A DNA stretch of 64,000 nucleotides, taken from Macrostomum lignano. Lineage: Eukaryota. Positions 34,680-61,083 of this stretch are shown here, piece after piece. The notes below the pieces were generated by a model. That model did no database searches. It was given only the letters and a program-made list of their open reading frames with translations, and was not told where the DNA came from. Each line of letters begins with the position of its first letter. Positions within the stretch are counted from its first letter, which is position 1. The position numbers were made by a program, and so were the translations under genes. Where the stretch lies: contig NIVC01001474.1 in assembly GCA_002269645.1 (NCBI GenBank), positions 100,475-164,474 of the forward strand, given 5' to 3'.

Positions 34680-35446
34680 TCACAGCACACAGAGTGCGGT
34701 GGACGGCCCAACCAGCTGCACCTCCGCTCGACCGTTCGGCTCCGAGTTTGCTCCGCTCGTTCTCACGACGCTCGTCGCCTCAACCGCTACGAAGCTGCCG
34801 CCGCCGCCGCCACCCCCGCAATTGCCCGAGCCGCCGCCTCCGCCCCCGCCGGAGCTGCTGCCGCCGCCGCCGCCTCCGCCGCCGCCTCCGTAGCCTCCAA
34901 ACGCGTCGTCGCCGTCGCCGCCGCTCCAGCTGCTGCCGAAGCTCTCACCGCCGCGACCATTCTTTCCACCGAAGCCGTCGTCGCCTGCCGACCACCAACC
35001 GGCGCCAGCTCCGCCGTTTCCACTGCCGGATGTCCTCGCTTGGCCGCCGTTGCCGTCTGTGCCGCCAGCGCCAGCTCCGTCGCCGTCGCCGCTGGTCCCG
35101 GGCTGGTCGCTGCTTCCGTCGATTCCGTTGCAGCCGTCATCGGAGCCAACCAGCGGCAGCGCTGACGACGTGTCGATACCGTCGACATAGACGAAGGTGC
35201 CACCGCCGCCGCCAGCGGCGTCATTTCCACCGCCAAGTTTGTCGCTGCCGACCTTGCCAACGATAATCGCCAACGTGACTCCGGCGTCCAGTCTGAAGTA
35301 GCCAGATGCGAGGACGCCCTTGCCGCCGACCGTGGAGCCGCCGGCGCTGCCGCCTCGAGCGCCCCAAGCGCTGATCTTGTAGCAGCCGGTGGCGTCGATC
35401 GGATGGGTCACGAGGCTGCCCGTCTGGGTGGTCACAGCCGCCGGGG
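34680..35446 (-). CDS. Copy A exon 2: ALK/LTK-type glycine-rich domain
   Basis: YKISAWGARGG..GGKG...GYFRL..G.TL.IIVGK.G, GGGGGTFV, GGGGGGSFV..GAN..PNG. Acceptor AATGCAG ends at 35447 (phase 1). Confidence 0.85.
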
Positions 35447-35597
35447 CTGCATTGGATTCAGCGAGTTGGTTGCTTTTTAAAATGAGATTAAGCGACAATG
35501 AGATTTGAGCTACTTTTTATTAACACGCATGTACGAGCCAGGAAAATGTTTTGGTTATATCTAAAAGCAATTGAGTCTTAAGCTAACAATAACTCAC

Positions 35598-36153
35598 CGG
35601 TCAACACTTGTGGGACAGCAGTCGTTGTTTTTGTCGGAGTTGTGGTCGTTGTTGTCGGAGTTGCGGTCGTCGTCGGAGTTGTGGTCGCTGTTGTCGGAGT
35701 TGTGGTCGCTGTTGTCGGAGTTGTGGTCGCTGTTGTCGAAGTTGTGGTTGTTGTTGTCGCAGTTGTTGCAGCTGTTGTCGCACTGCATTCAGGCCGGTTA
35801 TCCAGCAGCTGTGTCAGACAGCCCGAGCCCGACTTCCACTTGTCGGCGAGGTCGCACGAGGAGCCGAGCACGCACTTTCCGCTGCTCAGCGTCACCGAGC
35901 CGACCGTGTCTCCCGGATGCAGCATCTGGAACACGGAGCAACTCAGCCGCCCTCTGGCAGCACATTCCACGGCGCAGATCCGATAATCCGTGACCCCGGA
36001 GACCTCCTTGAACGTGGCATTGGTTGCACCTGGAAGGGGCAGTTCGACAACGCAGAGGTTGACAGTCGGCACCGTGAAGGTGGCGCAGCGGACAGACTGG
36101 CAGCAGACGGCGGACAGCAGAGCCAGCAGAACTGCACTGCTAGCTGCAGTCAT
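35598..36153 (-). CDS. Copy A exon 1: signal peptide, PAN/apple-like domain, ~60-aa Thr-rich stalk
   Basis: Hydrophobic N-terminus; C..EC.....C.VF...C.L spacing; donor G|GTGAGT at 35597; TATAAA at 36242-36237. Confidence 0.8.
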
Positions 36154-37364
36154 GGTGCAACTTGGATTTTGGCTTCAGGAATTGGGCTTGTGTGAGCAGT
36201 CAAGAGCTGTGATAAGTTGCCTGTCTTTGCTGCAGGTTTATAGCGGTGGCTCTGCTTCTGTGCATGGGTTGGCGGCACGGGGTGAGGCAAATCACTGGGC
36301 CACCAGTTGCCAATGGAAACGGCCACTAACAACTATTGCGGCTGGGTGGGGCGCGCCTTTCTGCTCCATCACAGAAGAGAGATAACAGCACCGGAGCCAT
36401 ATGAATGCTTTGCCTGTATTAATCAACGGGGGGTGGGGGTGGGACAGCCCCCCTACTAATTGGATGGTTAGGATCATTTGGCAGCAGTGGTGCAGTCATA
36501 TACTCGCAGCTGCTACAAATGCCCTTGCTGAGATCCTGATGAAGCATGGCACTAGACCTGCCCTACCCCCTCACTTAACCATGGCTTAGGAGATAATTCT
36601 ATGTATCTAAGTTCTATTCAAGTTTTATGAACCCCTGCAGCGTCTCGGTGATTCAAGTTAGGTGCGTAGTTTTTTCTCATTAATAATTTGGCATTATTAT
36701 GATCATGTATAAGTTAAATGAAGACATGAATTTAAACTTTCCCAGTTAAATGAAACTATAAACCATAATTTGACACGTTCAAAACAGTGTCCGCCGCATG
36801 CTTATGCACTAAAGGCATTTACTACAATTAGTCAATCTGTCAATTTATTACGAAAACCACTAGAAAACTTGCGTGTGATTCTTCTTAAAAAGTTGTTGTT
36901 CTTGGTCTATTTTCTACTGCTCTCCCTACAAAAGGCCATCGCGGTGTAAAGTGTGAGTTTTACAACTTGCATGGGAGATCCAAGGGAATTTGATTACTGA
37001 GGCCACAGACAAATAAGTAATAACCAGACCAAGTACCCCAGCTCCCACCTCCTGACGATCGATAACAAGGGCTTCGCTTCCTACCCCTCAAACATGGGGC
37101 CTGTTGTATTATTGTTGCCTTTTGCCGTGGGATATGGATTTCTAACCATTTATCCCAAACTTTATGTGCAATTAAACAGTTTAAATGGGCAGCATTATTT
37201 TAATGGTTTACCCATATTGATCAAAAACAAAAATAAACACTTGTAAGACAAAATGAGGCCTTTCTTGTTGTTGCAGATAGAATACAAACACCAATAAGAG
37301 TACATGAATAGCTACGCTCACCTTCACCTGGTTCTAAGACTACGAGCGTATAAATTATATTAAT

Positions 37365-37664
37365 TTATTTATATAAATTTATCCCATCTCCGGCATGCAC
37401 CAGCCGCTCCCTAAATGTTGAGAAAAACTTATTGCCCAGTCTGAGTCCGTGGCTTTCCTGTACTTGCTGCAGCATCCACACAAATTTCCATTCAATATTT
37501 CCTCTGTTCGGCGAAAAAAATATTGCCAGGGACTGCCAATGGTTTCGAATCAGCTTCAACGTGTGCGGTACATCCAAGAAGGCTGAAACCTGAATGCCTG
37601 AATACTTATTGGTCTGTGACTGAGGCAAAATGTGGCAACTTTTTAATGCTGCTGAGCATTTCAT
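37365..37664 (-). mobile_element. P-element/THAP9-type transposase remnant
   Basis: DVPHTLKLIRNH and IEWKFV..LQQVQE..GLRLGNK match the P-element GTP-binding region. Confidence 0.7.
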
Positions 37665-38069
37665 TTGCTCGCACTCGATCCCTGATAATCCTTGAGAACT
37701 TAATCAAACAACTTCAGAGAACAGGAACAAAAATTGATGAAGCATAATACGCAAAATCCCTGCTACTTGTGCAGTGTTTCTGATGAAGGTAAATACCCCC
37801 CCCCCACTTTCTCAGCCATGAACTAAATTCTTTATCTGACCCTCCAGGTAAAAGAATCGCCGACATCTGTCTTAATTTAACATGCAAAGCATGCCAATCT
37901 GTTGTATTTACGAGTATTTCATCACCCCAAGCCAAAAGTTGCAAACTTCTTCTGTCTTGAATCAAGAATATTTGTAAAAAAATGTTGACTGCAAGTACTC
38001 TTAGCGTTAAGCTAGGCCTTAGCTTAAAAAATTGATAGCTTTCTAAAGACTAGGCTATCACTAGTCTTG

Positions 38070-39150
38070 TTTTTTTTTTAAATTTGGAGCCTTAAGTCAA
38101 GTTTTTCGAAGATTCCTGGCAGAAAAATTGGAAAATGCCTCAGATTGAAATTGCGCGGCCACATTAATCTTTTTGAGGCTGTCGCACAAAAAAGGCATGG
38201 GACTTTTCACCGCGAGTAGTGCACATGAAGGCTATTCAGAGTGTCTACATTACTTGAACATGATACAATCAGAGCTGCCTTGAACTCTTTGTGAGCACAT
38301 TACCTGCTCTTTGCTCATCCGTGGTGCGTGTGCGCTCGCCTCTTTGCTAGTCGACTGTCAATTATGCACATTCCCCAATCCTCACATTCCCCAATCTGCA
38401 CATTCCCAAATCTGCACATTCCCAAATCTGCACATTCCCCAATCTGCACATTCCCCAATCTGCACATTCCCAAATCTGCACATTCCCAAATCTGCACATT
38501 CCCCAATCTGCACATTCCCCAATCTGCACATTCACCAATCTGCACATTCCCCAATCTGCACATTCTTCAATCTGCACATTCCCCAATCTGCACATTCTTC
38601 AATCTGCACATCCCCCAATCTGCGCATCCCCAAATCAGGCCCTACCAGACACCCTACCAGGCTTCGAAATTCCACCGTAAAACCCCCAACGGAAAGCTAT
38701 AGCACAGCTAATCGAAACGGTGTCAAGGCCATTGGACAGTCCCATCAAGAAGCCGCGACAAGTCGTGGCGTAATATCCAGATGATTCACTTCGTAGCCAC
38801 ACAGACCCAGGACAGCGAATCCGAAGTCAATAGTGAGCAGATTGGTGGACAGGAAAATATGATACGTCTTAGAAATAGGAATTATGCTTGAAATGGGATA
38901 TTTCGCTCGCAGCAGTTGATGCAGCATGCCTTTGAAATATGCAGACCAAGGCCTACAAATTGCAGTGTGCGATGTTGCACACCTGCTCAACCTCTTTTTA
39001 AAGCAGGCATGGCTGGAGATCTTGTCTCCATGCTGCCCTACTAACCGAGGAGTACTAGGGGTACACGTCCCACGAGTGTTTGAGGTGGATCCTAGGGCCA
39101 CTGGACAGACTGGGAAACGGCGCCAGTCACCCTTCCGGAGCTTTGGCCTT
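38070..39150 (+). repeat. ~1.1 kb direct repeat, copy 1, with a 16-bp minisatellite (AATCTGCACATTCCCC)n at ~38365-38630
   Basis: Nearly identical to 42450-43600. Confidence 0.9.
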
Positions 39151-39199
39151 TGACCTTAGCCGCCAAGATTTCGGGTTATCTAGGTGTTACTCCCAGCTA

Positions 39200-40125: not shown

Positions 40126-40569
40126 GACATAAGATAAGGTTAGAGGTCCCCGCCATGCTTAGACTCTCCGGAGAACTATTATCTTAGGAAATAAGAACAT
40201 ATTAATTTTCTCTGATTTTAGAAAGCCCAGCACGTGAGCAGCCTGCGCAACTTTTTTCGATAAGGTCATCTATCCAGTACATAGTACATTCACATGCCAA
40301 TTGTGAGAGTTAAATTTAGGGGTGGACAGACTTATGCATCATTATCGTCTCTTTGTGCATAAGTTGAATGATTTAATTATGTCATGTAAGCAGTGAAGGC
40401 ATATATGATGAGCAATTGTCAGTTTGCGATTTTCTTGAGAATATCATTATTATTAACACAGTTGCATGCTCGCAAATACAGAAGAGATAAATTTCATAGC
40501 ACCTAAAAGTTATAAGCTTCTAATTTCAGAACCACTATGAAAAATAATGTACGCTCGTTAAATGATTCT

Positions 40570-40900: not shown

Positions 40901-41120
40901 AAAGTGCTCCGTACATGTATTTTCGATACAGGAGAGGCATAATGGACATGATTCTCACTGCGTAGGGCTCAAAAGTATTTGAATTTCACGGTTTATAGAT
41001 AAGCATAGATAAACTGTATTTTTTGCAGATTGCAGTAGCAGTAAGAGCGTAAATATTTTATGGTAAAAATATTACTAAGTAAATAACGGGCAAGTGCGCA
41101 GTTAGCGACGGTGAGCAGAC

Positions 41121-42185
41121 ATGGCATTATGGAAGTATTTCCAGCGCAACCGATTAACCAGCACAATGGGCATTCTGCTTGTGGCAGCAGCCACTGCCTT
41201 ATTCTGGTTCGGTCAGCTGCAGTCACCTGCTGGCAGCCAGAACCTGAAGACGAAGAACTCCAGCAGCGCGGCGCCACCAATCATCAGAGATGAACACTTG
41301 TTCAACATTACAGCCGAAGACAAGAGTCTGCAGCAGTACATCAAGTTGGCGTCGGAACACAATGTCACCACCAGCTCGCTGAGAGCGGTCATCACCATTC
41401 TGGCCTATAAACCGCGGGAGAAGAAGCTGAAGCACTGTCTGCAGAAACTGTACGCGAATTTCAACAACCAGTTCGGCTATCCAGTTATTTTATTTCACGA
41501 GGCGGACTTCCAACCATACCTGGCTGCAGTGAGATCTACCGGCTTCAATCCTCTTCTCAATTTGTCCTCAATATTCTTCCAGCAGGTGGACATGAGCGTC
41601 CCCAGCTCCTACATAGCTGAGTTCGGCCAGCCGCCCAAAAAAGGTTGCGGCGCCAAGAACAGCATCGGGTACAGGAGCATGTGCAGATTTCAAGCCAAAC
41701 TGATCTACGAGGAGCCCATGATGAGGCACTTTGACTACCAATTAAGACTAGACGACGATTCGGTGTTGGAGAAGCCGATCTCGTTCGATCTGTTTGCAGC
41801 TCTCCGAGATGCTCGGTGCTCCTATGGCTACGTGCAGACTATCCTGGACTCGTGCGCGCACAACACCTTCCAAGTGGCAGCAGACTACATGCGAATGAGG
41901 GCGATTAGTCCGACCTTCTTTGATCGGCTCAAGCGTAACGAAGTGTTCTTCAACAACTTCGAGGTCTCCAGTCTGAAGGTCTGGCGATCCCAGCAGTACA
42001 GGGACTTCTTAGAGCACGTGGACTCTCTGGGCGGATTCTACACGCACAGATGGGGCGACGCCCCGATCAAGACAATGGCTCTGAGCATGATTGTGCCGGA
42101 GACTGAGATCTGCAAGTTCAACAACGTCACGTACAAGCATCACGGTTTGAATAATAAACGTCTAAAGACCGAGTTTCTGCATTGA
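41121..42185 (+). CDS. GT15-family (KRE2/KTR/MNT1-like) alpha-1,2-mannosyltransferase, type II membrane protein, intronless, 354 aa
   Basis: N-terminal TM anchor; GYRSMCRF, FDYQLRLDDD, YGY, FFNNFEV and GGFYTHRWGDAPI correspond to the fungal motifs SYRHMCRF, YDWYWRVEPD, FWSNFEI and GGFFYERWGDAPV. Confidence 0.88.
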   Translation: MALWKYFQRNRLTSTMGILLVAAATALFWFGQLQSPAGSQNLKTKNSSSAAPPIIRDEHLFNITAEDKSLQQYIKLASEHNVTTSSLRAVITILAYKPREKKLKHCLQKLYANFNNQFGYPVILFHEADFQPYLAAVRSTGFNPLLNLSSIFFQQVDMSVPSSYIAEFGQPPKKGCGAKNSIGYRSMCRFQAKLIYEEPMMRHFDYQLRLDDDSVLEKPISFDLFAALRDARCSYGYVQTILDSCAHNTFQVAADYMRMRAISPTFFDRLKRNEVFFNNFEVSSLKVWRSQQYRDFLEHVDSLGGFYTHRWGDAPIKTMALSMIVPETEICKFNNVTYKHHGLNNKRLKTEFLH

Positions 42186-42449
42186 ACTGATGGCAGCGAT
42201 GTTTATTCTTAGAGTTTCTAACTAACATGAGAAGAAGAGAATTAATTGCAGAATTATTAAAAGTTTATTTATTAACAGAATGCCTGCCTTTTATAAGACA
42301 TCTTAGTCTTGATTATTCGTCATCAAGCGCACTGCTCAAACTCTGAACTTATTGAGTCTTACAATAACGAGTCCTACCGTAAGTTGCACAAGCTGTTGTC
42401 TAAGACCACTTCTCCCAGAAATAAATCGAAGCGTTGTGTTTTGTTTTTT

Positions 42450-43600
42450 TTAAATTTGGAGCCTAAAGTCAAGTTTTTCGAAGATTCCTGGCAGAAAAAT
42501 TGGAAAATGCCTCAGATTGAAAGTGCGCGGCCACATTAATCTTTTTGAGGCTGTCGCACAAAAAAGACATGGGACTTTTCACCGCGAGTAGTGCACATGA
42601 AGGCTATTCAGAGTGTCTACATTACTTGAACATGATACAGTCAGAGCTGCCTTGAACTCTTTGTGAGCACATTCCCTGCTCTTTGCTCATCCGTGGTGCG
42701 TGTGCGCTCGCCTCTTTGCTAGTCGACTGTCAATTATGCACATTCCCCAATCCTCACATTCCCCAATCTGCAAATTTCTCAATCTGCACATTCCCCAATC
42801 TGCACATTCCCCAATCTGCACATTCCCCAATCTGCACATTCCCCAATCTGCACATTCCCCAATCTGCACATTCCCCAATCTGCACATTCCCCAATCTGCA
42901 CATTCCCCAATCTGCACATTCCCCAATCTGCACATTCCCCAATCTGCACATTCCCCAATCTGCACATTCCCCAATCTGCACATTCCCCAATCTGCACATT
43001 CCCCAATCTGCACATTCACCAATCTGCACATTCCCCAATCTCCACACTCCCCAACCTGCACATTCCCCAATCTGCACATCCCCCAATCTGCACATTCTCA
43101 ATCTGCAAATCCCCTAATCTGCACCCTACCAGGCTTCGAAATTCCACCGTAAAACCCCCAACGGAAAGCTATAGCACAGCTAATCGAAACGGTGTCAAGG
43201 CCATTGGACAGTCCCATCAAGAAGCCGCGACAAGTCGTGGCGTAATATCCAGATGATTCACTCCGTAGCCACACAGACCCAGGACAGCGAATCCGAAGTC
43301 AATAGTGAGCAGATTGGTGGACAGGAAAATATGATACGTCTTAGAAATAGGAATTATGCTTGAAATGGGATATTTCGCTCGCAGCAGTTGATGCAGCATG
43401 CCTTTGAAATATGCAGACCAAGGCCTACAAATTGCAGTGTGCGATGTTGCACACCTGCTCAACCTCTTTTTAAAGCAGGCATGGCTGGAGATCTTGTCTT
43501 CTTGCTGCCCTATTAGCCGACGGTAGGGGTACACGTCCCACGAGTGTTCGAGGGCCACTGGACAGACTGGGAAACGGCGCCGGTCACCCTTCCGGAGCTT
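42450..43600 (+). repeat. ~1.1 kb direct repeat, copy 2, with an expanded 16-bp minisatellite at ~42738-43115
   Basis: Nearly identical to 38070-39150. Confidence 0.9.
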
Positions 43601-44199
43601 TGGCCCTTGGCCTTAGCTGCTAAGGTTACGGGTTATCCCGAAGCGCTTCCCTGTGCGTTATCAGGTGTCTCTGGTTACGGCTGTGAGGTAAAGGTGACCG
43701 TAACAGGGTACGCAGCTGGATTGCTGAAGGCTTTGATGCTGAAGGTTTTGACCGCTGGAATGTCGGGCAGCAAAACCGGCCGCTAGCAGTTTCTTTTTTA
43801 TTTCTTGCTTCCGTGACTCTGCTCACCCTTTCCCGATTTCAGCCATGGCTTCTACCGCCTCAAGTAATCCCGCTGAAGCCGGGACCCCGGCAACTCCGGC
43901 CGGTGATTCTGGCGCCAGCGCCGCCTTTTTTGTCTGCGGAAAAACCTGGACGCGCATCCGCGAGCCCTCTGGCCAGACGTATTTTACTAATTAATGAAAA
44001 TGTAAGCACTTGCAGTGTTCTGACTACTCTACTAAAAGTAAACAAATATGCAAATGTAGAATAAGTAGATATTATTCTTTATTTTCAATCTTGAGGTAAT
44101 TTATTATTTGGCGCAAATAGAAACGCACGGTCGTCGTGTTAAGATTCTTACTTGCTCAAGTAATTACAGTGTTCTGTTAGTCAGCACTTATTGTTAGAT

Positions 44200-46928: not shown

Positions 46929-47048
46929 TCAGAGCAGACACGGCAGTGCGGTGGACGGCCCAACCAGCTGCACCTCCGCTCGACCGTTCGACTCCGAGTT
47001 CGCTCCGCTCGTCCTCACGACGCTCGTCGCCTCGGTCGCTACAAAGCT

Positions 47049-47092
<44 letters not shown>

Positions 47093-47779
47093 AGCCGCGT
47101 TTCCCGGAGCCGCCGCCGCCGCCCGAAAAGCCGCCGCCTCCGCCCCCGCCGGAGCTGCCGCCGCCGCCGCCGCCTCCGCCGCCGCCGCCTCCGCCGCCGC
47201 CGCCGTAGCCGCCAAACGCGTCCTCGCCGTCGCCGCCGCTCCAGCTGCTGCCGAAGCTCTCACCGCCGTGGCCCTTCTTACCGCCGGAGCCGTCGTCGCC
47301 TGCCGATCTCCAACCGGCGCCGGCGCCGCCGTTTCCACTGCCGGATGTCCTCGCTTGGCCGCCGTTGCCGTCTGTGCCGCCAGCGCCCGCTCCTTTGCCG
47401 CCGCCGCTCGTCCCGGGCTGGTCGTTGCTTCCGTCGATTCCGTCGCAGCTGTCGCCGGATCCGCCGCCGCCGCCAGCCGCGACCAGCGGCATTGCTGACG
47501 ACGTGTCGACACCGTCGATATAGACGAAGGTGCCACCGCCGCCGCCAGCGGCGTCATTTCCACCGCCAAGCTTGTCGCTGCCGACCTTGCCAACGATAAT
47601 CGCCAACGTGACTCCGGCGTCCAGTCTGAAGTAGCCGGATGCGAGGGCGCCCTTGCCGCCGAACGTGGAGCCGCCGGCGCTGCCGCCTCGAGCGCCCCAA
47701 GCGCTGATCTTGTAGCAGCCGGTGGCGTCGATCGGATGGGTCACGAGGCTGCCCGTCTGGGTGGTCGCAGCGACCGGGG
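46929..47779 (-). CDS. Copy B exon 2: ALK/LTK-type glycine-rich domain with expanded poly-Gly; splice acceptor mutated (AG to AA at 47780)
   Basis: Same motifs as copies A and C. The acceptor reads AATGCAA instead of AATGCAG. Confidence 0.75.
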
Positions 47780-47922
47780 TTGCATTGGATTCAGCGAGTT
47801 GGTTGCTTTTTAAATTAAATCAAACAACGATGAGATTTCGACTACTTTGAATCTCAACACTTGCATGTAGAAAAATATTTCTGTGTTTTAAACGCAATTG
47901 AGTCTTAAGCTCAATAACTCAC

Positions 47923-49108
47923 CGGTCAACACATGTGGGGCAGCAGTCGTTGTTGTTGTAGGAGTTGTCGTTGTTGTTGTTGTAGGAGTTGTCGTTGTTA
48001 TCAGAGTTGTGGTCGTCGTTGTCGGAGTTGTAGTCGTTGTTGTCAGAGTTGTGGGCGTCGTTGTCGGAGTTGTAGTCGTTGTTGTTGTCGGAGTTGTGGT
48101 CGTTGTTGTCTGAGCTGTGGTTGTTGTTGTTGTCGGAGTTGTTTTCCTTGTTGTCGGAGTTGTGGTCATTGTTGTCGGGGTTGACGTTGTTGTTGTCGGA
48201 GTTGTTTTCCTTGTTGTCGGAGTTGTGGTCGTTGTTGTCGGAGTTGTTCGTGTTGTTCTTGGAATTGTGGTTGTTTTTGTTGTCGGAGTTGTGATTGTTG
48301 TTGTTGTCGGAGTTGTGGTCGTTGTTGTCGGTGTTGTGGTCGTTGTTGTTGTCGGAGTTGTGGTTGTTTTTGTTGTCGGAGTCGTTCTCGTTGTTGTCGG
48401 GGTTGCGGTTTTTGTTGTCGGGGTTGTGGTCGTTGTTGTCGGAGTTGTCGTTGTTGTTTTCGGAGTTGTCGTTGTTGTTGTCGGAGTTTTTCTTGTTGTT
48501 GTCGGAGTTGTGGGCGTTGTTATTGAAGTTGAGGTCGTTGTTGTTGTTGGAGTTGTGGTCGTTGTTGTTGTCGGAGCTGTGGTCACGGTGGTCTTAGTCG
48601 TTGTCGTTGTTGTCGGTGTTGTGGCCGTTGTTATTGTCGGAGTTGTCGTTGTTGTTGTCGGAGTCGTTCTCGTTGTTGTCGGGGTTGTGGTTTTTGTTGT
48701 CGGAGTTGTGGTCGAATCGGTCTTCGTTGTTGTCGGACTGCATTCAGGCCGGTTATCCAGCAGCTGTGTCAGACAGCCCGAGCCCGACTTCCACTTGTCG
48801 GCGAGGTCGCACGAGGAGCCGAGCACGCACTTTCCGCTGCTCAGCGTCACCGAGCCGACCTTGTCTCCCGGATGCAGCATCTGGAACACGGAGCAACTCA
48901 GCCGCCCTCTGGCCGCGCATTCCACTGCGCAGATTCGATAATCCGTGACCCCGGAGACCTCCTTGAACGTGGCATTGGTTGCACCTGGAAGGGGCAGTTC
49001 GATAGCGCAGAGGTTGACAGTCGGCACCGTGAAGGTGGCGCAGCGGACAGACTGGCAGCAGAGGGCGGACAGCAGGGCCAGCAGAGCTGCACTGCTAGCT
49101 GCAGTCAT
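47923..49108 (-). CDS. Copy B exon 1: signal peptide, PAN-like domain, ~270-aa Thr-rich stalk
   Basis: ATG of MTAASS at 49108; donor G|GTGAGT at 47922; TATAAA at 49192-49187. Confidence 0.8.
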
Positions 49109-49544
49109 GGTGCAACTTGGATTTTGGATTCCGGAGCTTGTGTGAGCAGTCAAGAGCTGTGGTGAGTTGCCTGTCTTTGCTACAGGTTTATAGCGGCTGC
49201 TCTGCTTCTGTTCTGGGGGGGGGGATTGGCGGCAGGGCGTGAGGCCAATCACTGGGCCACCAGTTGCGATGGAAACGAGACTAACAACTTTCGCTGGGGT
49301 TGCTGGCTGTTGTATGGGGATCTAAAAGATTTATCTGGAGTTGGAAAGCAGTTGTTCCCCCTTATTCGTTTTTATAGATTTAAAGAGCTGCATGTTCTGT
49401 ATGTCGCAGACGCATGTAATACCATTGCAACTAGTATATAGTTTCGGTGGAACCATTCATGCTTTAAATGCGGGCAAAGTTTGGCGTTTTTGTCGATTTT
49501 TATTTGATTACTATTTGATAAAATCGTCTTTACCGCAACAAAAG

Positions 49545-49980: not shown

Positions 49981-52879
49981 AATTTGGTTATGCGAACAAT
50001 CTGTCACTGCCGCGGCGTCTGATCCGTCCCCTGATACCCTCAGGGACCTTCAGAGTTTCATTTACGCCGCTGAGCAATGGGCGGATCATTGTGGTCTTAC
50101 AGCGTTTTGAGACTAAGACACCAGCAGGACCAAGTGGCAGATTCGGCCGCTCACGCTTTACGGAAAGGGAAAAGGCAAGCAGACTAAATGTCTAAGGGAT
50201 TATTACCCTGTACCACAGGCTCGTCTGGTCACCCCACGTTCAAGCAAAAGCCAAGAGGGCCCTCGCAAATCTCGCGCAGGTAACGATTGCAATCAGTTTG
50301 GTTCGGAGCTGTGCTTTGGAGTTCGATTAAATATTTCGATATTTTCTAAATCAATAGTTACTAGCGTAGTCTGACGTTGAGTAGAAGCTCGAAGCTCGAA
50401 GCTAAGTAAAACCATTGTTACGGCACTTTGTCACTATTCACATAGATTTGATTTATGAATTGAAGCTTTTCAAATGAAATGAAATGAAAAATTATTTCGC
50501 CACAGTGTCGCCACAATGGATGTACACGTCCCGTACATGCGTAATGTCAGAGCGACGCCAGAACGTTTGGGAGAATTGTTAAAATATTCTCAAAAATTCA
50601 TGGTATTTATTGCAATTATTCAGTTAGTCAATTTATTTACTAGGACCAGAAAATTTGCATTTTATTCTTCTTGAATTGTCCTTGGACAAAGCGGATGTCA
50701 ACGAAGCACCGAATGGTACGGCTGGAGTCCATTGTTCAGGCGATGTGCACCGCCCATAAAAGACAGAGTTGGCAATTAAAATCAGATTTTTGATTTCTTC
50801 CTTTTTAAATCAAGTATATTTGTAATAAAAATCTGGACTAGGCCTAGCTTAAAAATTAAAAGCTTTCCAAAGACTATAGGTCAAGAACAATATGAAAAAC
50901 AATATTGATAAATATTGTCTACATTTAATATTCTAGTCTAGTAAATATAACTAGCATTCTTGCATGGCTTAAGAGTACCTGCATGCGAATTTCTTTACAA
51001 ATATACTTGATGTAAAAAGGAAGAAAATATTCCAGCGATTGCAACTTTGCTAACTTAAGCGCAAATTTATTGTGTGGAGTGTGCATTCTAAATTAATAGA
51101 ATGGTAATTTATACTGTTGAAGAGTTTATTGGGTGGCGATGAGTCACTCAAAAATTCCCACTTCTAGACACTGGGGAACAAGTGCCTAGGAATTTGCAAA
51201 TTCGAATAACTCTTACTGCAGAGGTCTTGTAGTGTGAAGCGCTGTCTGACTTGGCTAAGCGGTGGCGGCCGGTTCCGGTGAACAGCTGTTGTCTCCTGGA
51301 GTCCTTAACTTTATCTGTGGGTCGACCAAAACGAGAGCGAATCAGAATTCTTGATGGTCCTCGAGCTCGGAATTAACAATAGAACGTGCGCCCCTATGAA
51401 CAATTGAATGCTTTGAATGCAATAGGTCCTCCTGAAGGGCGTCTTCTTCGTTACGTCCAAAACGTAACGGATAACTCAAATCAACTCAATAATCCTCTAG
51501 GAATGTATCCTAGGAAACAAGGCCTTTCTCAAATGTGTCGACAACAAGTGGCTCTCGTAAACTCAATTAATCAACTTATTAGTGCTATAGCAAAGAACTA
51601 AATCGGGTAACGCTTACCAATCTGTCCGGATTTCTTCTCTCAGAGATGGGCCTTCTTAGTTAACGATTCCAAAGTCTTCCTTGAGACCGCTCCGAGTCTG
51701 AATTTTTTACTCGGATTTTCGCTTATATTTATAGTAAAATTTTGGTGAAAACTGGTTTGAAATCCGGTTATTTATTTAGGTCATGCGTGTTTGATTAAGG
51801 GGTCATGAATGTTTGATCATCACCATATATATGGAATTAAGCAAATACAACTCTCCAGAACCAGTTCCTTTATCAAATAAACGTTGGTCCTACGTATGGC
51901 TCTGAGTCACTTCTGTTTCCACATGACTCATTCTAAAAATAGATATTTTAAAATAGAATGACGCATGATGACTCATTCTAAAAATAGATTGCGAGTTTTA
52001 ATTGATTTTCTTAGATGTTACTTGAAGTAGTGCAATACGGTATGATTAGCGGCTCTCTACACTGTCCCACATCAAATGTAAGCATGTATTGATTCTGTAA
52101 TGAAAAAGCAATTTTCTCTTATCTCTGCAGTGTTTTTTCCCAGGAAATCAGCCTCCAAAAAAGTACACAATGTTTTATAATGCAGTTGGTGTTTGAAAGA
52201 GAGTCAGGCTGGGAACGGGGCGCGCAGAGGCGCTCGGAGGTCAGAGAGGCGACAGTTCAGACACAATAGAACAAAGGCAGCGCTTATAAATAGAAACGCT
52301 ATGCAAAGCCCTCTGTGAGGTGACATGAAGGAGAATACGAGACACCTATCGTAGAATCGATAGGCCGCATAACAGCAATGGGAGGAGAGTGTGACAGAAC
52401 ATTGACCCCATTGAAACATTGTTACGAGACACTAGGAAAGGAATAGAGAAGTTGAGTGCTAACATCAAAGGGCTAATACTTCTGTATTAGATGCAGGGGT
52501 ATATGTTCAATAGTTAGAGTGAAATTATTTTCCTAGATTTTTTCCTGAGCAGAAGAGGGTCTCAGTATAAGTCTGGAGAACAAGTCTGAGTATATATCTG
52601 AGCTAGTATTTCTTACTCCTTACTGGTAGCGTAATTAGTAACCGAGCGGTCTACTATTTGGCCCGAAAGTTCTTACACATGTAAATGTGTCTCTTGGAAC
52701 AACTCTTCGTTTTGAATTTCTCAGTAGATACGCTCGTATCTAAGTATTCAATCATCCAGTCCTTAGTCGTTACGAATATTAGAGGGTCACGGCCTTCTTA
52801 ATAATGTATATGTATTTCTAAGATCGACTACGTTTCAATTCGATCTCCTTTAGTATTCTGTGTATCATTAGTAAATACA

Positions 52880-54265
52880 AAAAACAACAAAATATGCGGT
52901 GAGCGTCACAGGGCGCGCCTCAAGGCCAGGTCGCGAATGAACGCCACGCCGCCTGCCGAATCCGGGGCGCCGGCGTCAGCCAGCGGGCAGTCGAGGAAAC
53001 GCCGAGTGCGCGCCTGCCCCCGCAGGTAGGGTGCCTGCAGCAGCGTTAGCAGCGTACGACTCGTCGCGGATGATGTGGTCTTCCAGCTGGAGTCGCCGAC
53101 GGCGCAACAGGTCGCTTGGACAGACCACGACGGCGCCGTGTTGGTCACTCGCTAGTAGCCGATCTTGAAGGCGGCGCGCAGCAGGCCAGCATCATGCGAA
53201 ACGAAAGGCAGCCCAGGCAAGCCCGCGGCGACGCCGCAAATCTTCGCGGACACCGGGAACCAGACCGCCGAGGTAGACGAACTGCTGACAACGCAATAGC
53301 TCTGTCGCCTGTCCATCAGCGCCTCGGCACAAAATTGCAGCCTCGATGTCCTCCGGCACGCAGAGCACGACGATCTTCTGCGTGCACCAGACCGACACTC
53401 GCCGCAACAGCAACTAGCTTGTCCAGTTGTCGCTGGGCGCCCTCGACAGTTGAGGACAGCAGGGCGAGGTCGTCAGCGTAGCCAAGCACGCTAAGCCGCC
53501 ATTCCGGTTGACGTCGACCCACGCGTCGCCGCAACAGAAAGCCGTCGTCGTTGGTAGGAAGAGCGGTCCGCAGCACCCAGTCAAGCTCCAGAACGAACAG
53601 GAACGGCGCAAGCGTATCTCCCTGAAGCATCCCGGAGGATGTCTCAAAAAAGTCCGATAGGCCGTCCGGTGTTTAAACAGCAGCTTTCGTATCACGGTAT
53701 ATCGCCATGATGGCGGAAATCAGCTGCTCTGGCACGTACGCACGGAGCACCTTTGGGAGCACAGACCTGACGACCGAGTCGAATATGCCTTCTTGAAATC
53801 TATGAAGATAACAATCAGGATCAACTGGCGTATCCGCGCTTCCTCGATGACCCGACGAAGAGCCAGAATCTGCGTCACTGTGCCGCGATGGGGCCGAAAG
53901 CCGTTCTGCTCAGGACGCAGGTACGGATCCAGCACGGGCTGCAACCGCGATAACAGCATCCGGTTGAACAACTTCGCAGCGCAGGACTGAAGGCAGATAC
54001 CTCGATGCTCATCAAGCCTCGTGGTGCCCGCGGCTTCTTAGGAACTGCGACGATGTGCGCCGTGGTCCATTTGTTGTGTGCCACCTCACCGAAGAGCGCG
54101 CGATTCATCACTCTGGCGCCCTCACTGGCCACACAGTGGATGCTCAGCGCCTCGATGGGCACCTCGTCCGGACCCAGCGCTTTCCCGCCCGGTGACTGTA
54201 GGGCGAGCTTCACAACGTCGGCTTGTGCTGACTGGTGCTAGGCTGAAGCTCACGTCTGCCGGCAA
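52880..54265 (-). mobile_element. 5'-truncated RTE-like LINE (RT), with internal deletions
   Basis: EQNGFRPHRGTVTQILALRR, FIDFKKA, LQGDTLAPFLF and YADD; 3' end shared with the 25243 copy. Confidence 0.85.
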
Positions 54266-55235
54266 TGTATGCCGGCATTAGTATATACTGGTACAGTGTA
54301 TGATTTCCTTCTATTTCCTTCTTTGATTTTTTTTTTAAGTCTCAGAGTATTTGAAAACAGTTGAAAAGATTAACTGAAACAAGTTGAAAACAAGATACAA
54401 GGTAACAATACTCAGTGCAACAAGTTGGTTGGCTCACTAGCCACTTCGCATCTATTTATACTATCCAAAAGACCTAGTCAATATATTAATTTTGAGATAT
54501 GTATAATTAAAACAAACTAGCAGCATCATAACAAACCTAATAGTAAAATATTATTTTACAGTTCAAAAATGAACTCAACTCAAAAATGAATATTATTGTT
54601 AACTGTCAGAGCAGTTAAACAAATATTTACTAAAAACGAATTTGGCTTCTATTAGTAGCAAATAGCACAGCAACGAGGAACGCTTAGATTTCACGCAACC
54701 ATCTCTTGTAAATGAAGTAGCTAAACACTGAGGAGAGGGAGCTAATGACGAAGAATACGAATAAGCAATCAGCCCGGCGGTCGAGAGAACGGCTCTGCAG
54801 TGGAGGGAAATAGTTAATGCTCATATATAGCATTCGAAGCTCATGGGCAACGCAACGTGGATATACGTACAGAGCGAGCGAGTTAGTAGTGAATATTAAT
54901 GCCGATCAGGTAGACGAAATTGACCAAGAAAATACAGCCGCTTGAATTAACAATCACCTTGGAAACTGCGATAAATCAGCTATGCTGCTTGTTGAAAGTG
55001 GTACAAGAAACCTGAAAACTATCGAAGCTCTGATGTCCGTATCTATATTGTAAACATAATCTAAGCGTACAAAAATTGTTTATAACTCATTGTCGATAAC
55101 CCAAACCCAACGTGCCAAGCTTGTGTAAATGTGAAACAAACTATCAATTATAAGAAATTCTTTTATCAACGAAACACGAAAAAGGCATCTGAAATCATAA
55201 AATAGCCCTCCTCCTAGCTAGGAATCCTTAAACTA

Positions 55236-56117
55236 CGGGTGTCCAAAAAGTAGTGATACTTTTAACCGTAGCTCTCGTTCTATAGCTTCCTGTGATTTAA
55301 AATTTTATGAACTGATAGCGGAAAATCTCTTCTACAGACTGCTTTTTGAATTTTTAAAATTGATACCAGAGAACAAAAGTTATACCCACGAAAGTAACAG
55401 TACCTGTATCATAGAGTTACACAAATTATAGGCTGAGCTTCACGAGATCCATGCCGAGTAAGCTTCGATGAATTGTTAATTTAGGCTTGTCCAACCTGTC
55501 AGCAATCTCTCTAATGGTCAATCGGGAGTCCTCGTCAAGAAGATTCAGAATGGAGTCCGCCAGTACATCAGGTCGATGAACGTATGGCCGCCCCGTCCGA
55601 TGCTGATCTGCCAAGTCAGTCCTTCCCTCGCTGAACTGCTCCATCCATTGATAAACTGTCATTTTGCTGACCGCAGAGGATCCGTGCGCAGAGCAAAGTT
55701 TTGCGTGAATTTCTGAGGCACTATGGCCAGCACCCCAAAGAGTGAAGATGGTACTTTGCTGAGCAACAACTGAGTGCACATCCATGTGTGTTGTCGAGTA
55801 TGGGCAATGAAATCAATTGCAAAATGCAAGCTCCTCTGTTTGCAAGTAAAGTAATGAATTTAATGCTTTATTTTTCTGCAGAATGAATAAGTGCAGAAGT
55901 CGACTATCATAAATTTTGATATAGTTTGTGTAACTCTATGATACAGGTACTGTTACTTTTGTGGGTATAACTTTTGTTCTCTGGTATCAATTTTAAAAAT
56001 TCAAAAAGCAGTCTGTAGAAGAGATTTGCCGCTATCAATTCATAAAATTTTAAATCACAGGAAGCTATAGAACGAGAGCTACAGTTGAAAGTATCACTAC
56101 TTTTTGGACACCCCTCG
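55236..56117 (-). mobile_element. Mariner/Tc1 internally deleted derivative with ~195-bp TIRs and TA target duplications
   Basis: TIR arms ~55236-55430 and ~55920-56117 (end CGAGGGGTGTCC); TA at 55234-55235 and 56118-56119. ORF 55785-55426 encodes a mariner HTH (SASEIH..L...G..AVS..TVYQW..QF.EGR..L.D..RTGRP). Confidence 0.88.
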
Positions 56118-56407
56118 TAATCAAGAGACACATCTATGCGACCGAAAGGTAAAATATTCTCGAAGATATAGTTCACGGCATGGTATATTTATTTATTTTA
56201 GTTCTTAGTCAAACAGATAGTACAAATTTGATGCCAACTTTAATCGTTAGTTTTTATCATAAAACAGTAAAAATTGTCAACGGTAAGTGGTGCGAGGTTA
56301 TTTGCTTATATTCAAAAGTTCAGCTTAGTAATAAGGATACTAAGGAGAAGATGTGATGTTGTAAAACTCGAACATCCAGCTTCTTTTTCTTGAGTCAAGT
56401 CGACCCG

Positions 56408-57222
56408 TCAGAGCAGACACGGCGGTGCGGTGGACGGCCCAACCAGCTGCACCTCCGCTCGACCGTTCGGCTCCGAGTTCGCTCCGCTCGTCCTCACGAC
56501 GCTCGTCGCCTCGGTCGCTACGAAGCTGCCGCCGCCGCCGCCACCCCCGCAATTGCCCGAGCCGCCGCCGCCGCCCGAGAAGCCGCCGCCTCCGCCCCCG
56601 CCGGAGCTGCTGCCGCCGCCGCCGCCTCCGCCGCCGCCGCCGTAGCCGCCAAACGCGTCGTCGCCGTCGCCGCCGCTCCAGCTGCTGCCGAAGCTCTCAC
56701 CGCCGTGGCCCTTCTTACCGCCGGAGCCGTCGTCGCCTGCCGACCACCAACCGGCACCGGCGCCGCCGTTTCCTTTGCCCGATGTCCTCGCTTGGCCGCC
56801 GTTGCCGTCTGTACCGCCAGCGCCCGCTCCGTCGCCGTCGCCGCTGGTCCCGGGCTGGTCGCTGCTTCCGTCGATTCCGTCGCAGCCGTCACCGGAGCCG
56901 CTGCCGCCGCCGCCGCCGGCCGCGACCAGCGGCAGCGCTGACGACGTGTCGATACCGTCGACATGGACGAAGGTGCCACCGCTGCCGCCAGCGGCGTCAT
57001 TTCCACCGCCAAGCTTGTCGCTGCCGACCTTGCCAACGATAATCGCCAACGTGACTCCGGCGTCCAGTCTGAAGTAGCCAGATGCGAGGGCTCCCTTGCC
57101 GCCGACCGTGGAGCCGCCGGCGCTGCCGCCTCGAGCGCCCCAAGCGCTGATCTTGTAGCAGCCGGTGGTGTCGATCGGATGGGTCACGATGCTGCCCGTC
57201 TGGGTGGTCGCAGCCGCCGGGG
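56408..57222 (-). CDS. Copy C exon 2: ALK/LTK-type glycine-rich domain (intact)
   Basis: Acceptor AATGCAG ends at 57223; full motif set including PLVAAGGGGG. Confidence 0.85.
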
Positions 57223-57366
57223 CTGCATTGGATTCAGCGAGCTGGTTGCTTTTTAAATTAGATCAAACAACGATGAGATTTCGACTACTTTGTATCTCAA
57301 CACTTGCATGTAGGGAAAATATTTCTGTGTTTTAAATGCAATTGAGTCTTAAGCTCAATAACTCAC

Positions 57367-58165
57367 CGGTCAACACTTGCGGGGCAGCAGTCGGAGTTGT
57401 GGTCGTTGTTGTTGTCGGAGTTGTGGTTGTTGTTGTTGTCGGAGTTGTGGTTGTTGTTGTTGTTGTCGGAGTTGTGGTTGTTGTTGTTGTCGGAGTTGTG
57501 GTTGTTGTTGTTGTCGGAGTTGTGGTTGCTGTTGTTGTCGGAGTTTTGGTCGTTGTTGTCGAAGTTGTGGTTGTTGTTGTCGGAGTTGTGGTTGTTGCTG
57601 TCGGAGTTGTCGTTGTTGTTGTTGGAGTTGTTGTTGTTGGAGTTGTCGTTGTTGTTATTGGAGTTGTGGTTGTTGGAGTTGTCGTTGTTGTTGTCGGAGT
57701 TGTGGTTGTTGTTGTTGGAGTTGTGGTTGTTGGAGTTGTCGTTGTTGTTGGAGTTGTGGTCGTTGTGGTCGAATCGGTCTTCGTTGTTGTCGGACTGCAT
57801 TCAGGCCGCTTATCCAGCAGCTGTGTCAGACAGCCCAAGCCCGACTTCCACTTATCGGCGAGGTCGCACGAGGAGCCGAGCACGCACTTTCCGCTGCTCA
57901 GCGTCACCGAGCCGACCGTGTCTCCCGGATGCAGCATCTGGAACACGGAGCAACTCAGCCGCCCTCTGGCTGCGCATTCCACTGCGCAGATCCGATAATC
58001 CGTGACCCCGGAGACCTCCTTGAACGTGGCATTGGTTGCACCTGGAAGGGGCAGTTCGACAGCGCAGAGGTTGACAGTCGGCACCGTGAAGGTGGCGCAG
58101 CGGACAGACTGGCAGCAGAGGGCGGACAGCAGGGCCAGCAGAGCTGCACTGCTAGCTGCAGTCAT
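57367..58165 (-). CDS. Copy C exon 1: signal peptide, PAN-like domain, ~140-aa Thr-rich stalk
   Basis: Donor G|GTGAGT at 57366; TATAAA at 58254-58249; the spliced CDS is 1614 nt and in frame. Confidence 0.82.
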
Positions 58166-60662: not shown

Positions 60663-60715
60663 CTGAAATGGAAGCAAAAACAGTTTGAATTTTTTAGACA
60701 CAATCATCTCAATCG

Positions 60716-61010: not shown

Positions 61011-61083
61011 GAACACTCACAGAAAGAGGGAAGGAGAGCCAGTCCACCCCAGTATCGCAGGGTGGCACAGTCTTGTCGCAGAC

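What the first reader, a model, noticed from the sequence alone, without database searches (positions are those of the whole stretch)
34680..58165. Three-gene family of secreted PAN - mucin stalk - ALK/LTK glycine-rich-domain proteins
Seen: each Thr-rich ORF ends at a phase-1 donor (ACC G|GTGAGT) and splices over a ~145-bp intron into the glycine-rich ORF, giving in-frame CDSs of 440 aa (A), 678 aa (B, if spliced) and 537 aa (C). Each has a signal peptide, an 8-Cys PAN/apple-like domain and no TM segment or kinase. Stalks are ~60, ~270 and ~140 aa, and poly-Gly lengths also differ. Established: the glycine-rich domain is the ligand-binding module of ALK/LTK receptors, and PAN domains bind proteins or glycans. 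Inference: soluble bivalent tethers or decoys with tunable spacer length, possibly mucus, adhesive or seminal-fluid components. I do not recognise this architecture from a characterised protein.
Basis: partly seen in the sequence, partly recalled or inferred. Interest (0 to 1): 0.75.

Follow-up and report, generated by a model that had tools for sequence, protein, structure and literature searches.

The report
Secreted flatworm mucin-like proteins with ALK-type domain
Three neighbouring, so far unannotated genes of the flatworm Macrostomum lignano encode secreted proteins that join a small cysteine-rich head, a sugar-coated threonine-rich rod of variable length, and the unusual glycine-rich binding domain otherwise known from the human ALK/LTK receptors; the design is real and uncharacterised, but what it binds is unknown.

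Summary
Three minus-strand, two-exon genes lie at the stated coordinates and give 440, 678 and 537 aa. All have a phase-1 GTGAGT donor and introns of 151, 143 and 144 nt. Copy B has CAA instead of CAG at the acceptor.

The window is Macrostomum lignano contig NIVC01001474.1. NCBI annotates no gene at A or B. A second contig carries two further copies with the same structure, and there B's counterpart has an intact CAG.

The C-terminal domain is a true ALK/LTK-type TNF-like/glycine-rich domain: a family profile hits ALK/LTK structures at E=3e-40, and the predicted fold matches only ALK/LTK/SCD-2. It is closer to bacterial surface proteins (40-46% identity) than to ALK (about 20%). There is no membrane segment, EGF-like module or kinase.

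The PAN/apple call for the N-domain is plausible but unproven. The stalk is a 21-nt minisatellite of 7, 35 and 16 copies, 66-77% Thr.

Both coding exons are under purifying selection (pN/pS 0.12-0.62). Stalk-less paralogues already exist as unreviewed UniProt "Apple domain-containing protein" entries.

Best reading: secreted, O-glycosylated two-headed binding proteins of a surface or mucus layer. The role is inferred only. This is a new variant of a known kind, of moderate interest.

The parts
36235..36244 (-). Gene A: conserved TATA-box motif GCTATAAACC, 89 nt upstream of the ATG
   Evidence: Invariant in the alignment of the three upstream regions, which have about 90% mean identity over 200 nt. 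Coordinates.
35598..36153 (-). Gene A exon 1 (556 nt, phase 1). Signal peptide 36153..36088, Cys-rich N-domain 36087..35782, Thr/Pro stalk 35781..35598 (61 aa; 21-nt repeat x7.3).
35447..35597 (-). Gene A intron (151 nt), GTGAGT...CAG
   Evidence: There is an in-frame stop 7 codons after the donor if the intron is left unspliced.
34680..35446 (-). Gene A exon 2: TNF-like/glycine-rich (ALK/LTK-type) domain plus stop. This copy has two in-frame deletions that remove the AAGGGG and FSGGGGG motifs.
   Evidence: The homeologous copy A2 on L002 lacks the deletions.
49185..49194 (-). Gene B: conserved TATA-box motif
47923..49108 (-). Gene B exon 1 (1186 nt, phase 1). Signal peptide, N-domain 49042..48737, stalk 48736..47923 (271 aa; 21-nt repeat x35).
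47780..47922 (-). Gene B intron (143 nt), GTGAGT...CAA. The acceptor AG is mutated to AA in this copy.
   Evidence: The counterpart B2 on contig NIVC01003194.1 has CAG.
46929..47779 (-). Gene B exon 2: glycine-rich domain with expanded GGC runs (longest Gly run 16)
58247..58256 (-). Gene C: conserved TATA-box motif
57367..58165 (-). Gene C exon 1 (799 nt, phase 1). Signal peptide, N-domain 58099..57794, stalk 57793..57367 (142 aa; 21-nt repeat x16).
57223..57366 (-). Gene C intron (144 nt), GTGAGT...CAG
56408..57222 (-). Gene C exon 2: complete TNF-like/glycine-rich domain plus stop

Best explanation
This is a tandem array of three young paralogues in Macrostomum lignano. Copy B has a damaged splice acceptor and copy A has two in-frame deletions. 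Each copy has its own TATA promoter.

Each encodes a secreted, non-enzymatic glycoprotein built of four parts:
- a signal peptide;
- a roughly 100-aa cysteine-rich head with a PAN/apple-like core motif;
- a Thr/Pro-rich rod, presumably O-glycosylated, whose length is set by the copy number of a 21-nt minisatellite;
- a C-terminal TNF-like/glycine-rich domain of the ALK/LTK type.

Proposed mechanism (inferred): the protein is an extracellular two-headed binder in a surface, mucus or secretion layer. The head binds one partner, a glycan or a protein. The glycine-rich domain binds a second partner through the loops that project from its rigid polyglycine lattice. This is the way the same fold is used for cytokine binding in ALK/LTK and for host recognition in a phage tail fibre. 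The stiff glycosylated rod sets the reach between the two.

Shown here: the gene structure, the domain homology, the absence of a membrane segment or kinase, purifying selection on both exons, and the rod-length variation. Inferred: splicing, secretion, glycosylation, the binding function and the tissue.
For: The same phase-1 GT(G/A)AGT donor and a 143-151-nt intron are present in all five copies. The CAG acceptor is present in four of the five, counting two copies on a second contig.

The glycine-rich exon cannot stand alone. It has no Met at all in A and C and no signal peptide of its own.

The intron behaves as non-coding. Its lengths differ by amounts that are not multiples of 3, and it is 73-96% identical between copies, against 93-98% for the exons.

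All 20 pairwise pN/pS values for the N-domain and the glycine-rich domain are 0.12-0.62.

Paralogues A0A1I8IMG2 (46% identical overall, 58% in the N-domain) and A0A1I8HRN4 carry an N-domain and a glycine-rich domain in one polypeptide without the stalk.

Domain identity of the C-terminal part:
- A family profile hits ALK/LTK ectodomain chains at E=2.7e-40 over profile positions 11-294.
- 16 of 28 aligned relatives hit PF12810.
- The AlphaFold model of A has pLDDT 60-90 in this domain. Its only significant Foldseek matches are 21 ALK/LTK/SCD-2 chains, at E 4e-6 to 5e-4.

Other features:
- Only the N-terminus is hydrophobic.
- The stalk is a 21-nt repeat of 7.3, 35 and 16 copies with 66-77% Thr.
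- The fold serves as a binding tip elsewhere: ALK:ALKAL and LTK:ALKAL complexes are in the PDB, and the Pam3 phage tail fibre gp24 uses it too (PMC9608196).
Against: - No transcript or junction read was available, so splicing is an inference.
- A second AG (tttaaaaAG) lies 26 nt upstream of the in-frame acceptor in every copy. Paired with the strong donor it would shift the frame. It gives an in-frame product only with a weak donor 4 nt downstream, and that product has 10 more residues.
- Single-sequence Pfam scores for PF12810 are below the gathering threshold: 10.3-21.6 bits against 24.5.
- The N-domain has no significant match to any Pfam family or solved structure, and its model is of low confidence (pLDDT 49).
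- Copy B lacks a canonical acceptor. Copy A lacks two conserved glycine motifs.
- No binding partner, tissue or phenotype is known.
Confidence: 0.55

Rival explanations
1. Soluble decoys or traps for the ligand of a flatworm ALK-type receptor. The free glycine-rich domain would sequester the cytokine, and the stalk and head would anchor it in the matrix.
For: The domain is homologous to the ligand-binding TG domain of ALK/LTK. The proteins have no membrane segment or kinase.
Against: - Identity to ALK/LTK is only about 18-24% in the structural alignment, against 40-46% to bacterial and metagenomic proteins.
- The roughly 25-residue insertion that ALK has between the VGQxG strand and the GGGGG motif is absent here (alignment).
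- No EGF-like module follows the domain; the protein ends about 10 residues after the last strand.
- No ALK ligand is known in flatworms (my own knowledge), and no search for one was run here.
Confidence: 0.07
2. Mucosal or epidermal pattern-recognition (immune) lectin-like molecules. The head and the glycine-rich tip would bind microbial surface glycans, and the mucin rod would hold microbes in the mucus. This is the same mechanism as the best explanation with a specific biological role.
For: - The same fold recognises host surface receptors in a phage tail fibre (PMC9608196), and its relatives include bacterial PEP-CTERM surface proteins.
- The family shows tandem duplication, homeologous copies and rapid length variation.
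- M. lignano has several subfamilies.
Against: There are no expression or binding data. pN/pS is below 1 throughout, with no sign of diversifying selection at this sampling.
Confidence: 0.15
3. Components of a reproductive (prostate or seminal-fluid) or adhesive-gland secretion.
For: The proteins look secreted, are mucin-like, are lineage-specific and sit in a tandemly duplicated family.
Against: The characterised M. lignano adhesive proteins ap1 and ap2 have quite different domains: vWD, C8, TIL, TSP-1, EGF and C-lectin (PMC8621496). Nothing here ties these genes to either organ.
Confidence: 0.1
4. The two ORFs are not joined in frame. The product would be a truncated head-plus-mucin protein, through use of the upstream AG or intron retention. 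The glycine-rich ORF would then be a decaying relic, or the whole cluster would be pseudogenes.
For: - An upstream AG with an A/T-rich tract is present in all copies and shifts the frame.
- B has lost the in-frame AG.
- A has lost two conserved motifs.
- NCBI annotates no gene at A or B.
- None of the candidate products tried is in the protein collection.
Against: - The glycine-rich frame is kept open and under purifying selection in five copies, with pN/pS 0.15-0.51.
- All indels in it are multiples of 3.
- The in-frame CAG is kept in four of five copies. One donor change, GTGAGT to GTAAGT, preserves the consensus.
- Paralogues join the two domains in one protein.
- A CTAAT/TTAAT/CTCAT branch-point-like motif lies about 9 nt before the upstream AG. 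By my inference that is too close for that AG to be used.
Confidence: 0.08

Closest known systems
ALK/LTK extracellular TNF-like/glycine-rich ('TG') supradomain (Pfam PF12810; PDB 7NX1, 7NWZ, 7LRZ, 7LIR)
   Same: It is the homologous domain. The ordered motif set is shared (YxIxAxGAxGG, GGKGA, VGQxG, GGGGGSFV, AAGGGGG, GGAGW, GGFGGGGGG, GGGGGYSGGGGG, GGGGGSY, GxVxI). The profile E-value is 2.7e-40, and the predicted fold matches only these structures.
   Different: There is no transmembrane segment, kinase, EGF-like, MAM or LDLa module. Identity is only about 20%. The ALK-specific insertion is missing. The domain sits at the C-terminus of a secreted protein, behind a mucin rod.
Unreviewed M. 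lignano proteins A0A1I8IMG2 and A0A1I8HRN4 ('Apple domain-containing protein'), and the A0A1I8J538-type fragments that UniProt names 'receptor protein-tyrosine kinase'
   Same: Same species, and the same head plus glycine-rich-domain combination. A0A1I8IMG2 is 58% identical in the head and 46% overall. The cysteine near the C-terminus is shared.
   Different: They have a linker of about 20 aa instead of the 61-271-aa Thr/Pro stalk. They are automatic predictions with no experimental characterisation. The A0A1I8HRN4 subfamily is only about 30% identical in the head.
Bacterial glycine-rich-domain surface proteins (PEP-CTERM and MYXO-CTERM sorted, some with PKD or Ig-like domains)
   Same: They are the closest sequence relatives of the C-terminal domain, at 40-46% identity and E down to 1e-21. 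They are likewise extracellular and not kinases.
   Different: They are prokaryotic and have different N- or C-terminal partners and anchors. They have no mucin stalk and no Cys-rich head. Their function is equally unknown.
Cyanophage Pam3 tail-fibre protein gp24 (TNF-like plus glycine-rich receptor-binding tip)
   Same: The TNF-like sandwich feeding a stacked glycine-rich lattice is used as a distal recognition module on an elongated stalk. It is reported to be structurally similar to C. elegans ALK 7LIR (PMC9608196).
   Different: It is a trimeric viral fibre with an alpha-helical shaft. No sequence relation was tested here. This is an analogy of use, not membership.
PAN-mucin-module matrix glycoproteins such as C. 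elegans LET-653 (PAN domains, mucin-like linker, ZP domain). This comparison rests on my own knowledge.
   Same: The general plan is shared: an N-terminal PAN-type head, an O-glycosylated linker and a C-terminal interaction module in a secreted protein.
   Different: The C-terminal module is a ZP domain, not a glycine-rich domain. The PAN identity of the flatworm head is unproven. No homology was tested.

Membership tests
ALK/LTK-type glycine-rich domain family (PF12810) | Single-sequence score above the Pfam gathering threshold (24.5 bits) | tested here: not met
   C scores 10.3 bits (E=0.67). A scores 21.6 bits (E=2.4e-4). The extreme glycine bias lowers these scores. 16 of the 28 aligned relatives match PF12810 at E<=0.01, with a best E of 2.1e-11.
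ALK/LTK-type glycine-rich domain family (PF12810) | Profile-level homology to solved TG domains over the whole domain | tested here: met
   A profile of the three window proteins plus 25 homologues hits ALK at E=2.7e-40, LTK at E=1.2e-34 and SCD-2 at E=9.6e-17. The ALK match covers profile positions 11-294.
ALK/LTK-type glycine-rich domain family (PF12810) | Ordered set of glycine motifs flanked by TNF-like beta strands | tested here: met
   The alignment shows 21 invariant columns, nearly all Gly. B and C have every motif. A lacks AAGGGG and FSGGGGG.
ALK/LTK-type glycine-rich domain family (PF12810) | TNF-like sandwich plus polyglycine lattice fold | tested here: met
   The AlphaFold model has pLDDT 60-90 in this part. 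The only Foldseek matches at E<=0.001 are 21 ALK/LTK/SCD-2 chains. TM-scores are modest (0.3-0.47), so support is moderate.
ALK/LTK receptor tyrosine kinases | Transmembrane segment, intracellular kinase domain and membrane-proximal EGF-like module | tested here: not met
   There is no hydrophobic window beyond residues 1-22. The ORF stops about 10 residues after the last strand. No Pfam family at all is reported for full-length A.
PAN/apple domain (PF00024, PF14295; PROSITE PS50948) | Significant match to a PAN/apple model | tested here: not met
   No Pfam family matches the window N-domains even at E<=10. Two members of the distant A0A1I8HRN4 subfamily hit PAN_1 at E=0.026. The UniProt names of the paralogues imply a PROSITE hit, which was not reproduced here.
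PAN/apple domain (PF00024, PF14295; PROSITE PS50948) | Core cysteine pattern C-x3-C-x5-7-C-x2-F ... C-x-L on a helix followed by strands | tested here: inconclusive
   The sequence shows ICAVECAARGRLSCSVFQ...GKCVLGSS. A profile search of the PDB gives as best hit the N-terminal region of a fungal 'Kelch domain-containing protein' (6RYV). I recall that region as a PAN domain. The E-value is 0.91.
PAN/apple domain (PF00024, PF14295; PROSITE PS50948) | PAN fold (beta sheet packed on one helix, nested disulfides) | tested here: inconclusive
   The model has pLDDT 49. Its order of elements, strand-helix-strand-strand-strand-helix, is compatible with a PAN fold. Foldseek finds nothing significant.
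Mucin-type (PTS) domain | Tandem-repeat Pro/Thr/Ser-rich region | tested here: met
   The region has 66-77% Thr and 10-13% Pro and is built of a 21-nt (7-aa) repeat in 7.3, 35 and 16 copies.
Mucin-type (PTS) domain | Dense O-glycosylation | not testable with these tools
   This needs glycoproteomics or lectin blots.
Gel-forming mucins | vWD/C8/TIL assemblies and a cystine-knot domain | tested here: not met
   No such Pfam hits.

The most novel reading that the evidence does not exclude
The stalked proteins, together with their stalk-less paralogues, are a flatworm family of free extracellular recognition molecules. They would use the ALK-type polyglycine lattice as a variable binding tip, in the way phage tail fibres do. 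Reach would be tuned by minisatellite slippage in the mucin rod. That would make the 'receptor' domain of ALK/LTK one late recruit from an older, widespread family of soluble and surface binding modules shared with bacteria.
Probability: 0.25. Interest if true: 0.65.

Novelty: new variant of a known kind. Interest (0 to 1): 0.4.

Why it matters
The glycine-rich TG domain has been characterised in animals almost only as the ligand-binding part of the ALK/LTK oncogenic receptors. Here it sits in a simple, secreted, non-kinase protein that has been duplicated several times in an animal open to RNAi and transgenesis. That offers a direct route to asking what the fold binds outside receptor signalling.

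The array also gives a clean example of protein reach being altered by minisatellite copy number. It adds at least five gene models that are missing from the public annotation of the M. lignano genome.

The functional reading is untested, so the present value is that of a well-defined lead rather than a discovery.

Tried and rejected
- Direct Pfam scans of the full proteins and of the N-domain gave nothing usable.
- A word-indexed search with the N-domain found nothing. An exhaustive HMMER search found one true relative only; the other five hits were repeat artefacts.
- A profile search with the N-domain alignment returned only A0A1I8HRN4-type fragments.
- The AlphaFold model of the N-domain was of low confidence (pLDDT 49), and its Foldseek hits are meaningless.
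- BLASTP of C against A0A1I8IMG2 was spoiled by composition filtering. I replaced it with a MAFFT alignment.
- Exact look-ups failed for the spliced, unspliced and alternatively spliced products. This gave no indirect transcript evidence.
- I considered that an 11-nt identity between the intron (AAGACTCAATT) and the M. lignano spliced leader (PMC5173321) marks a retroposed origin or a trans-splicing signal. I rejected this as probably chance, because copy A2 on the second contig does not keep it.
- Intron folding gave z-scores from +0.9 to -1.2, which are not significant.
- Literature searches for Macrostomum with glycine-rich, apple domain or mucin, and for PF12810, found no characterisation.
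- Li et al. 2021 (PMC8639777) is not held.

Full report
**Origin of the window**

The 354-aa ORF at 41121..42185 (+) is identical to a protein of Macrostomum lignano. It lies on contig NIVC01001474.1 of assembly GCA_002269645.1, so the window is roughly bases 100,475-164,474 of that contig. In the 21 kb around that ORF, the NCBI annotation calls only a phosphatase gene and this glycosyltransferase gene. Genes A and B of the finding are therefore not annotated. None of the spliced, unspliced or alternatively spliced products I tried is in the 15-billion-protein collection.

**The observation**

Three gene copies lie on the minus strand.

| Copy | Exon 1 | Intron | Exon 2 | Protein |
|---|---|---|---|---|
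| A | 36153..35598 | 151 nt | 35446..34680 | 440 aa |
| B | 49108..47923 | 143 nt | 47779..46929 | 678 aa |
| C | 58165..57367 | 144 nt | 57222..56408 | 537 aa |

- The donor is ACCG|GTGAGT in phase 1 in all three.
- The in-frame acceptor is ccaatgCAG in A and C, but ccaatgCAA in B.
- B has no other AG that would keep the frame and the start of the domain.
- tblastn finds exactly three N-domain/glycine-rich pairs in the window.
- The duplicated unit is the gene plus about 200 bp of upstream sequence. That stretch is about 90% identical between copies and holds an invariant GCTATAAACC motif 84-89 nt before the ATG.

**Is the splice real?**

No RNA data could be reached, so this rests on sequence logic.

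1. The glycine-rich exon has no Met at all in A and C, and no signal peptide of its own. It cannot be translated alone.
2. Left unspliced, exon 1 stops 3-11 codons after the donor.
3. A second contig, NIVC01003194.1 (locus L002), has the same layout of gene, glycosyltransferase, gene. Its two further copies are A2 (434 aa) and B2 (658 aa).
   - All five copies have a phase-1 donor. It is GTGAGT four times and GTAAGT once, and that one change keeps the consensus.
   - Introns are 151, 143, 144, 150 and 151 nt. The differences are not multiples of three.
   - The acceptor is CAG in four of the five. B2 has CAG, so B's CAA is a private change of the window copy, or an assembly error.
4. Introns are 73-96% identical between copies, against 93-98% for the exons.
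5. All 20 pairwise pN/pS values lie between 0.12 and 0.62 for both the N-domain and the glycine-rich domain.
6. Two paralogues in UniProt carry both domains in one polypeptide.

One caveat applies. Every copy has another AG (tttaaaaAG) 26 nt upstream of the in-frame acceptor.
- Paired with the strong donor, it shifts the frame.
- Paired with a weak donor 4 nt downstream (GGTGA|GTTATT), it gives an in-frame product 10 aa longer.
- A CTAAT/TTAAT/CTCAT motif lies about 9 nt before that AG. If it is the branch point, the AG would be too close to be used. This is my inference.
- Either in-frame model gives the same architecture.

**The C-terminal domain**

Single-sequence Pfam scores for PF12810 are below threshold: 10.3 bits for C and 21.6 for A, against a cut-off of 24.5. 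Compositional correction on a sequence that is 33-38% glycine explains this.

The homologue search gave 556 hits at E<=0.001. Among the 120 listed, most of those that carry a source name are bacterial, for example Planctomycetes PEP-CTERM proteins. Identity reaches 40-46%. A coral protein and an M. lignano 'Apple domain-containing protein' are also among them.

The alignment shows the full ordered set of glycine motifs between beta strands. Its profile hits solved structures strongly:
- ALK ectodomains at E=2.7e-40
- LTK at E=1.2e-34
- C. elegans SCD-2 at E=9.6e-17

The ALK match covers almost the whole profile.

The AlphaFold model of A has pLDDT 60-90 in this part. Its only significant Foldseek matches are 21 ALK/LTK/SCD-2 chains. 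The homology claim is therefore sound.

The domain differs from ALK in four ways:
- Identity is about 20%.
- The ALK insertion after the VGQxG strand is absent.
- No EGF-like module follows the domain.
- There is no membrane segment or kinase.

Copy A has lost two conserved motifs through in-frame deletions. Its homeologue A2 has not. B has expanded GGC runs.

**The N-terminal domain**

The evidence here is weak.
- Pfam gives nothing, even at E<=10.
- An exhaustive HMMER search of 1.84 billion representatives finds a single real relative, A0A1I8IMG2. It is 58% identical over the head, and there the head is followed directly by a glycine-rich domain.
- A more distant subfamily (A0A1I8HRN4 and at least seven fragments) aligns at about 30% identity. 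Two of its members touch PAN_1 at E=0.026.
- A profile search of the PDB puts the N-terminal region of a fungal 'Kelch domain-containing protein' (6RYV) first, but at E=0.91. I recall that region as a PAN domain.
- hhalign against plasminogen, HGF and factor XI PAN/apple sequences aligns the same C-x3-C...C-x-x-F core at P=0.05.
- The model is of low confidence (pLDDT 49). Its order of elements is compatible with PAN, but Foldseek finds nothing.

I therefore call it a cysteine-rich head with a PAN/apple-like core, membership unproven. It has nine cysteines between residues 23 and 123, not eight, unless cleavage follows C23.

**The stalk**

The stalk is a 21-nt (7-aa) minisatellite present in 7.3, 35 and 16 copies. 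This gives 61, 271 and 142 aa with 66-77% Thr and 10-13% Pro. The homeologues have 41 and 255 aa.

In A0A1I8IMG2 the same position holds a linker of only about 20 aa. The stalk is therefore an expansion specific to this cluster.

**What it most likely does**

The architecture is that of a secreted, rod-like glycoprotein with a folded module at each end. The TG fold is a binding device wherever its function is known:
- cytokine binding in ALK/LTK (PDB complexes);
- host recognition at the tip of the Pam3 phage tail fibre, which the authors found structurally similar to C. elegans ALK (PMC9608196).

Relatives of the domain are also found in bacterial proteins with cell-surface sorting signals.

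I therefore favour a two-headed extracellular binder in a surface or secretion layer, with its reach set by the stalk. Alternative readings are:
- a ligand decoy, which is unlikely given the distance from ALK;
- an immune or mucosal role;
- a reproductive or adhesive role;
- non-joined or decaying genes.

The known M. lignano adhesive proteins have different domains (PMC8621496). No paper describing this family was found.

**Verdict**

The PAN call and the functional ideas remain open. The head-plus-glycine-rich combination already exists in databases as uncharacterised automatic entries, so the stalked, tandemly duplicated form is a new variant of a known kind. It is of moderate interest.

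Noticed in passing
window 41121-42185 (+): An intronless gene for a type-II membrane protein of glycosyltransferase family 15 (PF01793, alpha-1,2-mannosyltransferase type, E=6.5e-33) lies between the mucin-like genes A and B. The same position is occupied on the second contig. As far as I know this family is mainly fungal, where it extends O-linked mannose on Ser/Thr-rich proteins. Whether the linkage means anything is unknown.
   Followed up: partly
L002 (NIVC01003194.1:41687-62751), 3822-5273 and 15834-17961, minus strand: A homeologous or allelic copy of the cluster with two further unannotated genes. A2 is 434 aa, has a 41-aa stalk, a GTAAGT donor and an intact glycine motif set. B2 is 658 aa, has an intact CAG acceptor and a stop shifted by 4 codons.
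   Followed up: yes
window 47780 (minus strand, last base of B's intron): The acceptor AG is AA in copy B only. No in-frame AG lies nearby. It could be a young null allele, a weakly spliced copy or an assembly error.
   Followed up: partly
window 35569-35579, 47896-47906, 57340-57350 (minus strand): The 11-mer AAGACTCAATT near the 5' end of each intron is identical to part of the M. lignano spliced leader (PMC5173321). It occurs nowhere else in the window. It is kept in B2 but not in A2, so it is probably chance.
   Followed up: partly
window 16136-17197 (+) and 30538-31599 (-): Two intronless 353-aa genes with the calcineurin-like metallophosphoesterase domain (PF00149), which look to me like PP1-type Ser/Thr phosphatases. 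They lie in inverted orientation and are 86% identical at the DNA level.
   Followed up: no
window 13318-15183 (+); 7613-8413 (-): An otopetrin-like 621-aa ORF (PF03189) and an ankyrin-repeat ORF.
   Followed up: no
window 38072-39180 and 42444-43637: Direct repeats of 1.1 kb (93-96% identical) flank the glycosyltransferase gene. Each contains a 16-nt minisatellite (TGCACATTCCCCAATC, 17 and 24 copies).
   Followed up: no
window 25244-28028 and 52877-54265: Related fragments of a non-LTR retrotransposon, with weak endonuclease and reverse-transcriptase matches below the Pfam cut-offs. One of them lies between genes B and C.
   Followed up: no
window 9450-9763, 10693-11296, 15132-15564, 17547-18869, 28208-28749, 33021-33990, 60698-63088: The window is unusually rich in long minisatellites, with periods of 14-41 nt and up to 48 copies. 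Several of them create long spurious ORFs.
   Followed up: no
UniProt A0A1I8J538, A0A1I8GD06, A0A1I8GLI0, A0A1I8JE37, A0A1I8I988, A0A1I8IA00: Short M. lignano fragments of about 190 aa (head plus the start of the glycine-rich domain) are named 'receptor protein-tyrosine kinase' by automatic annotation, although they contain no kinase. The name is probably propagated from the PF12810 hit.
   Followed up: partly
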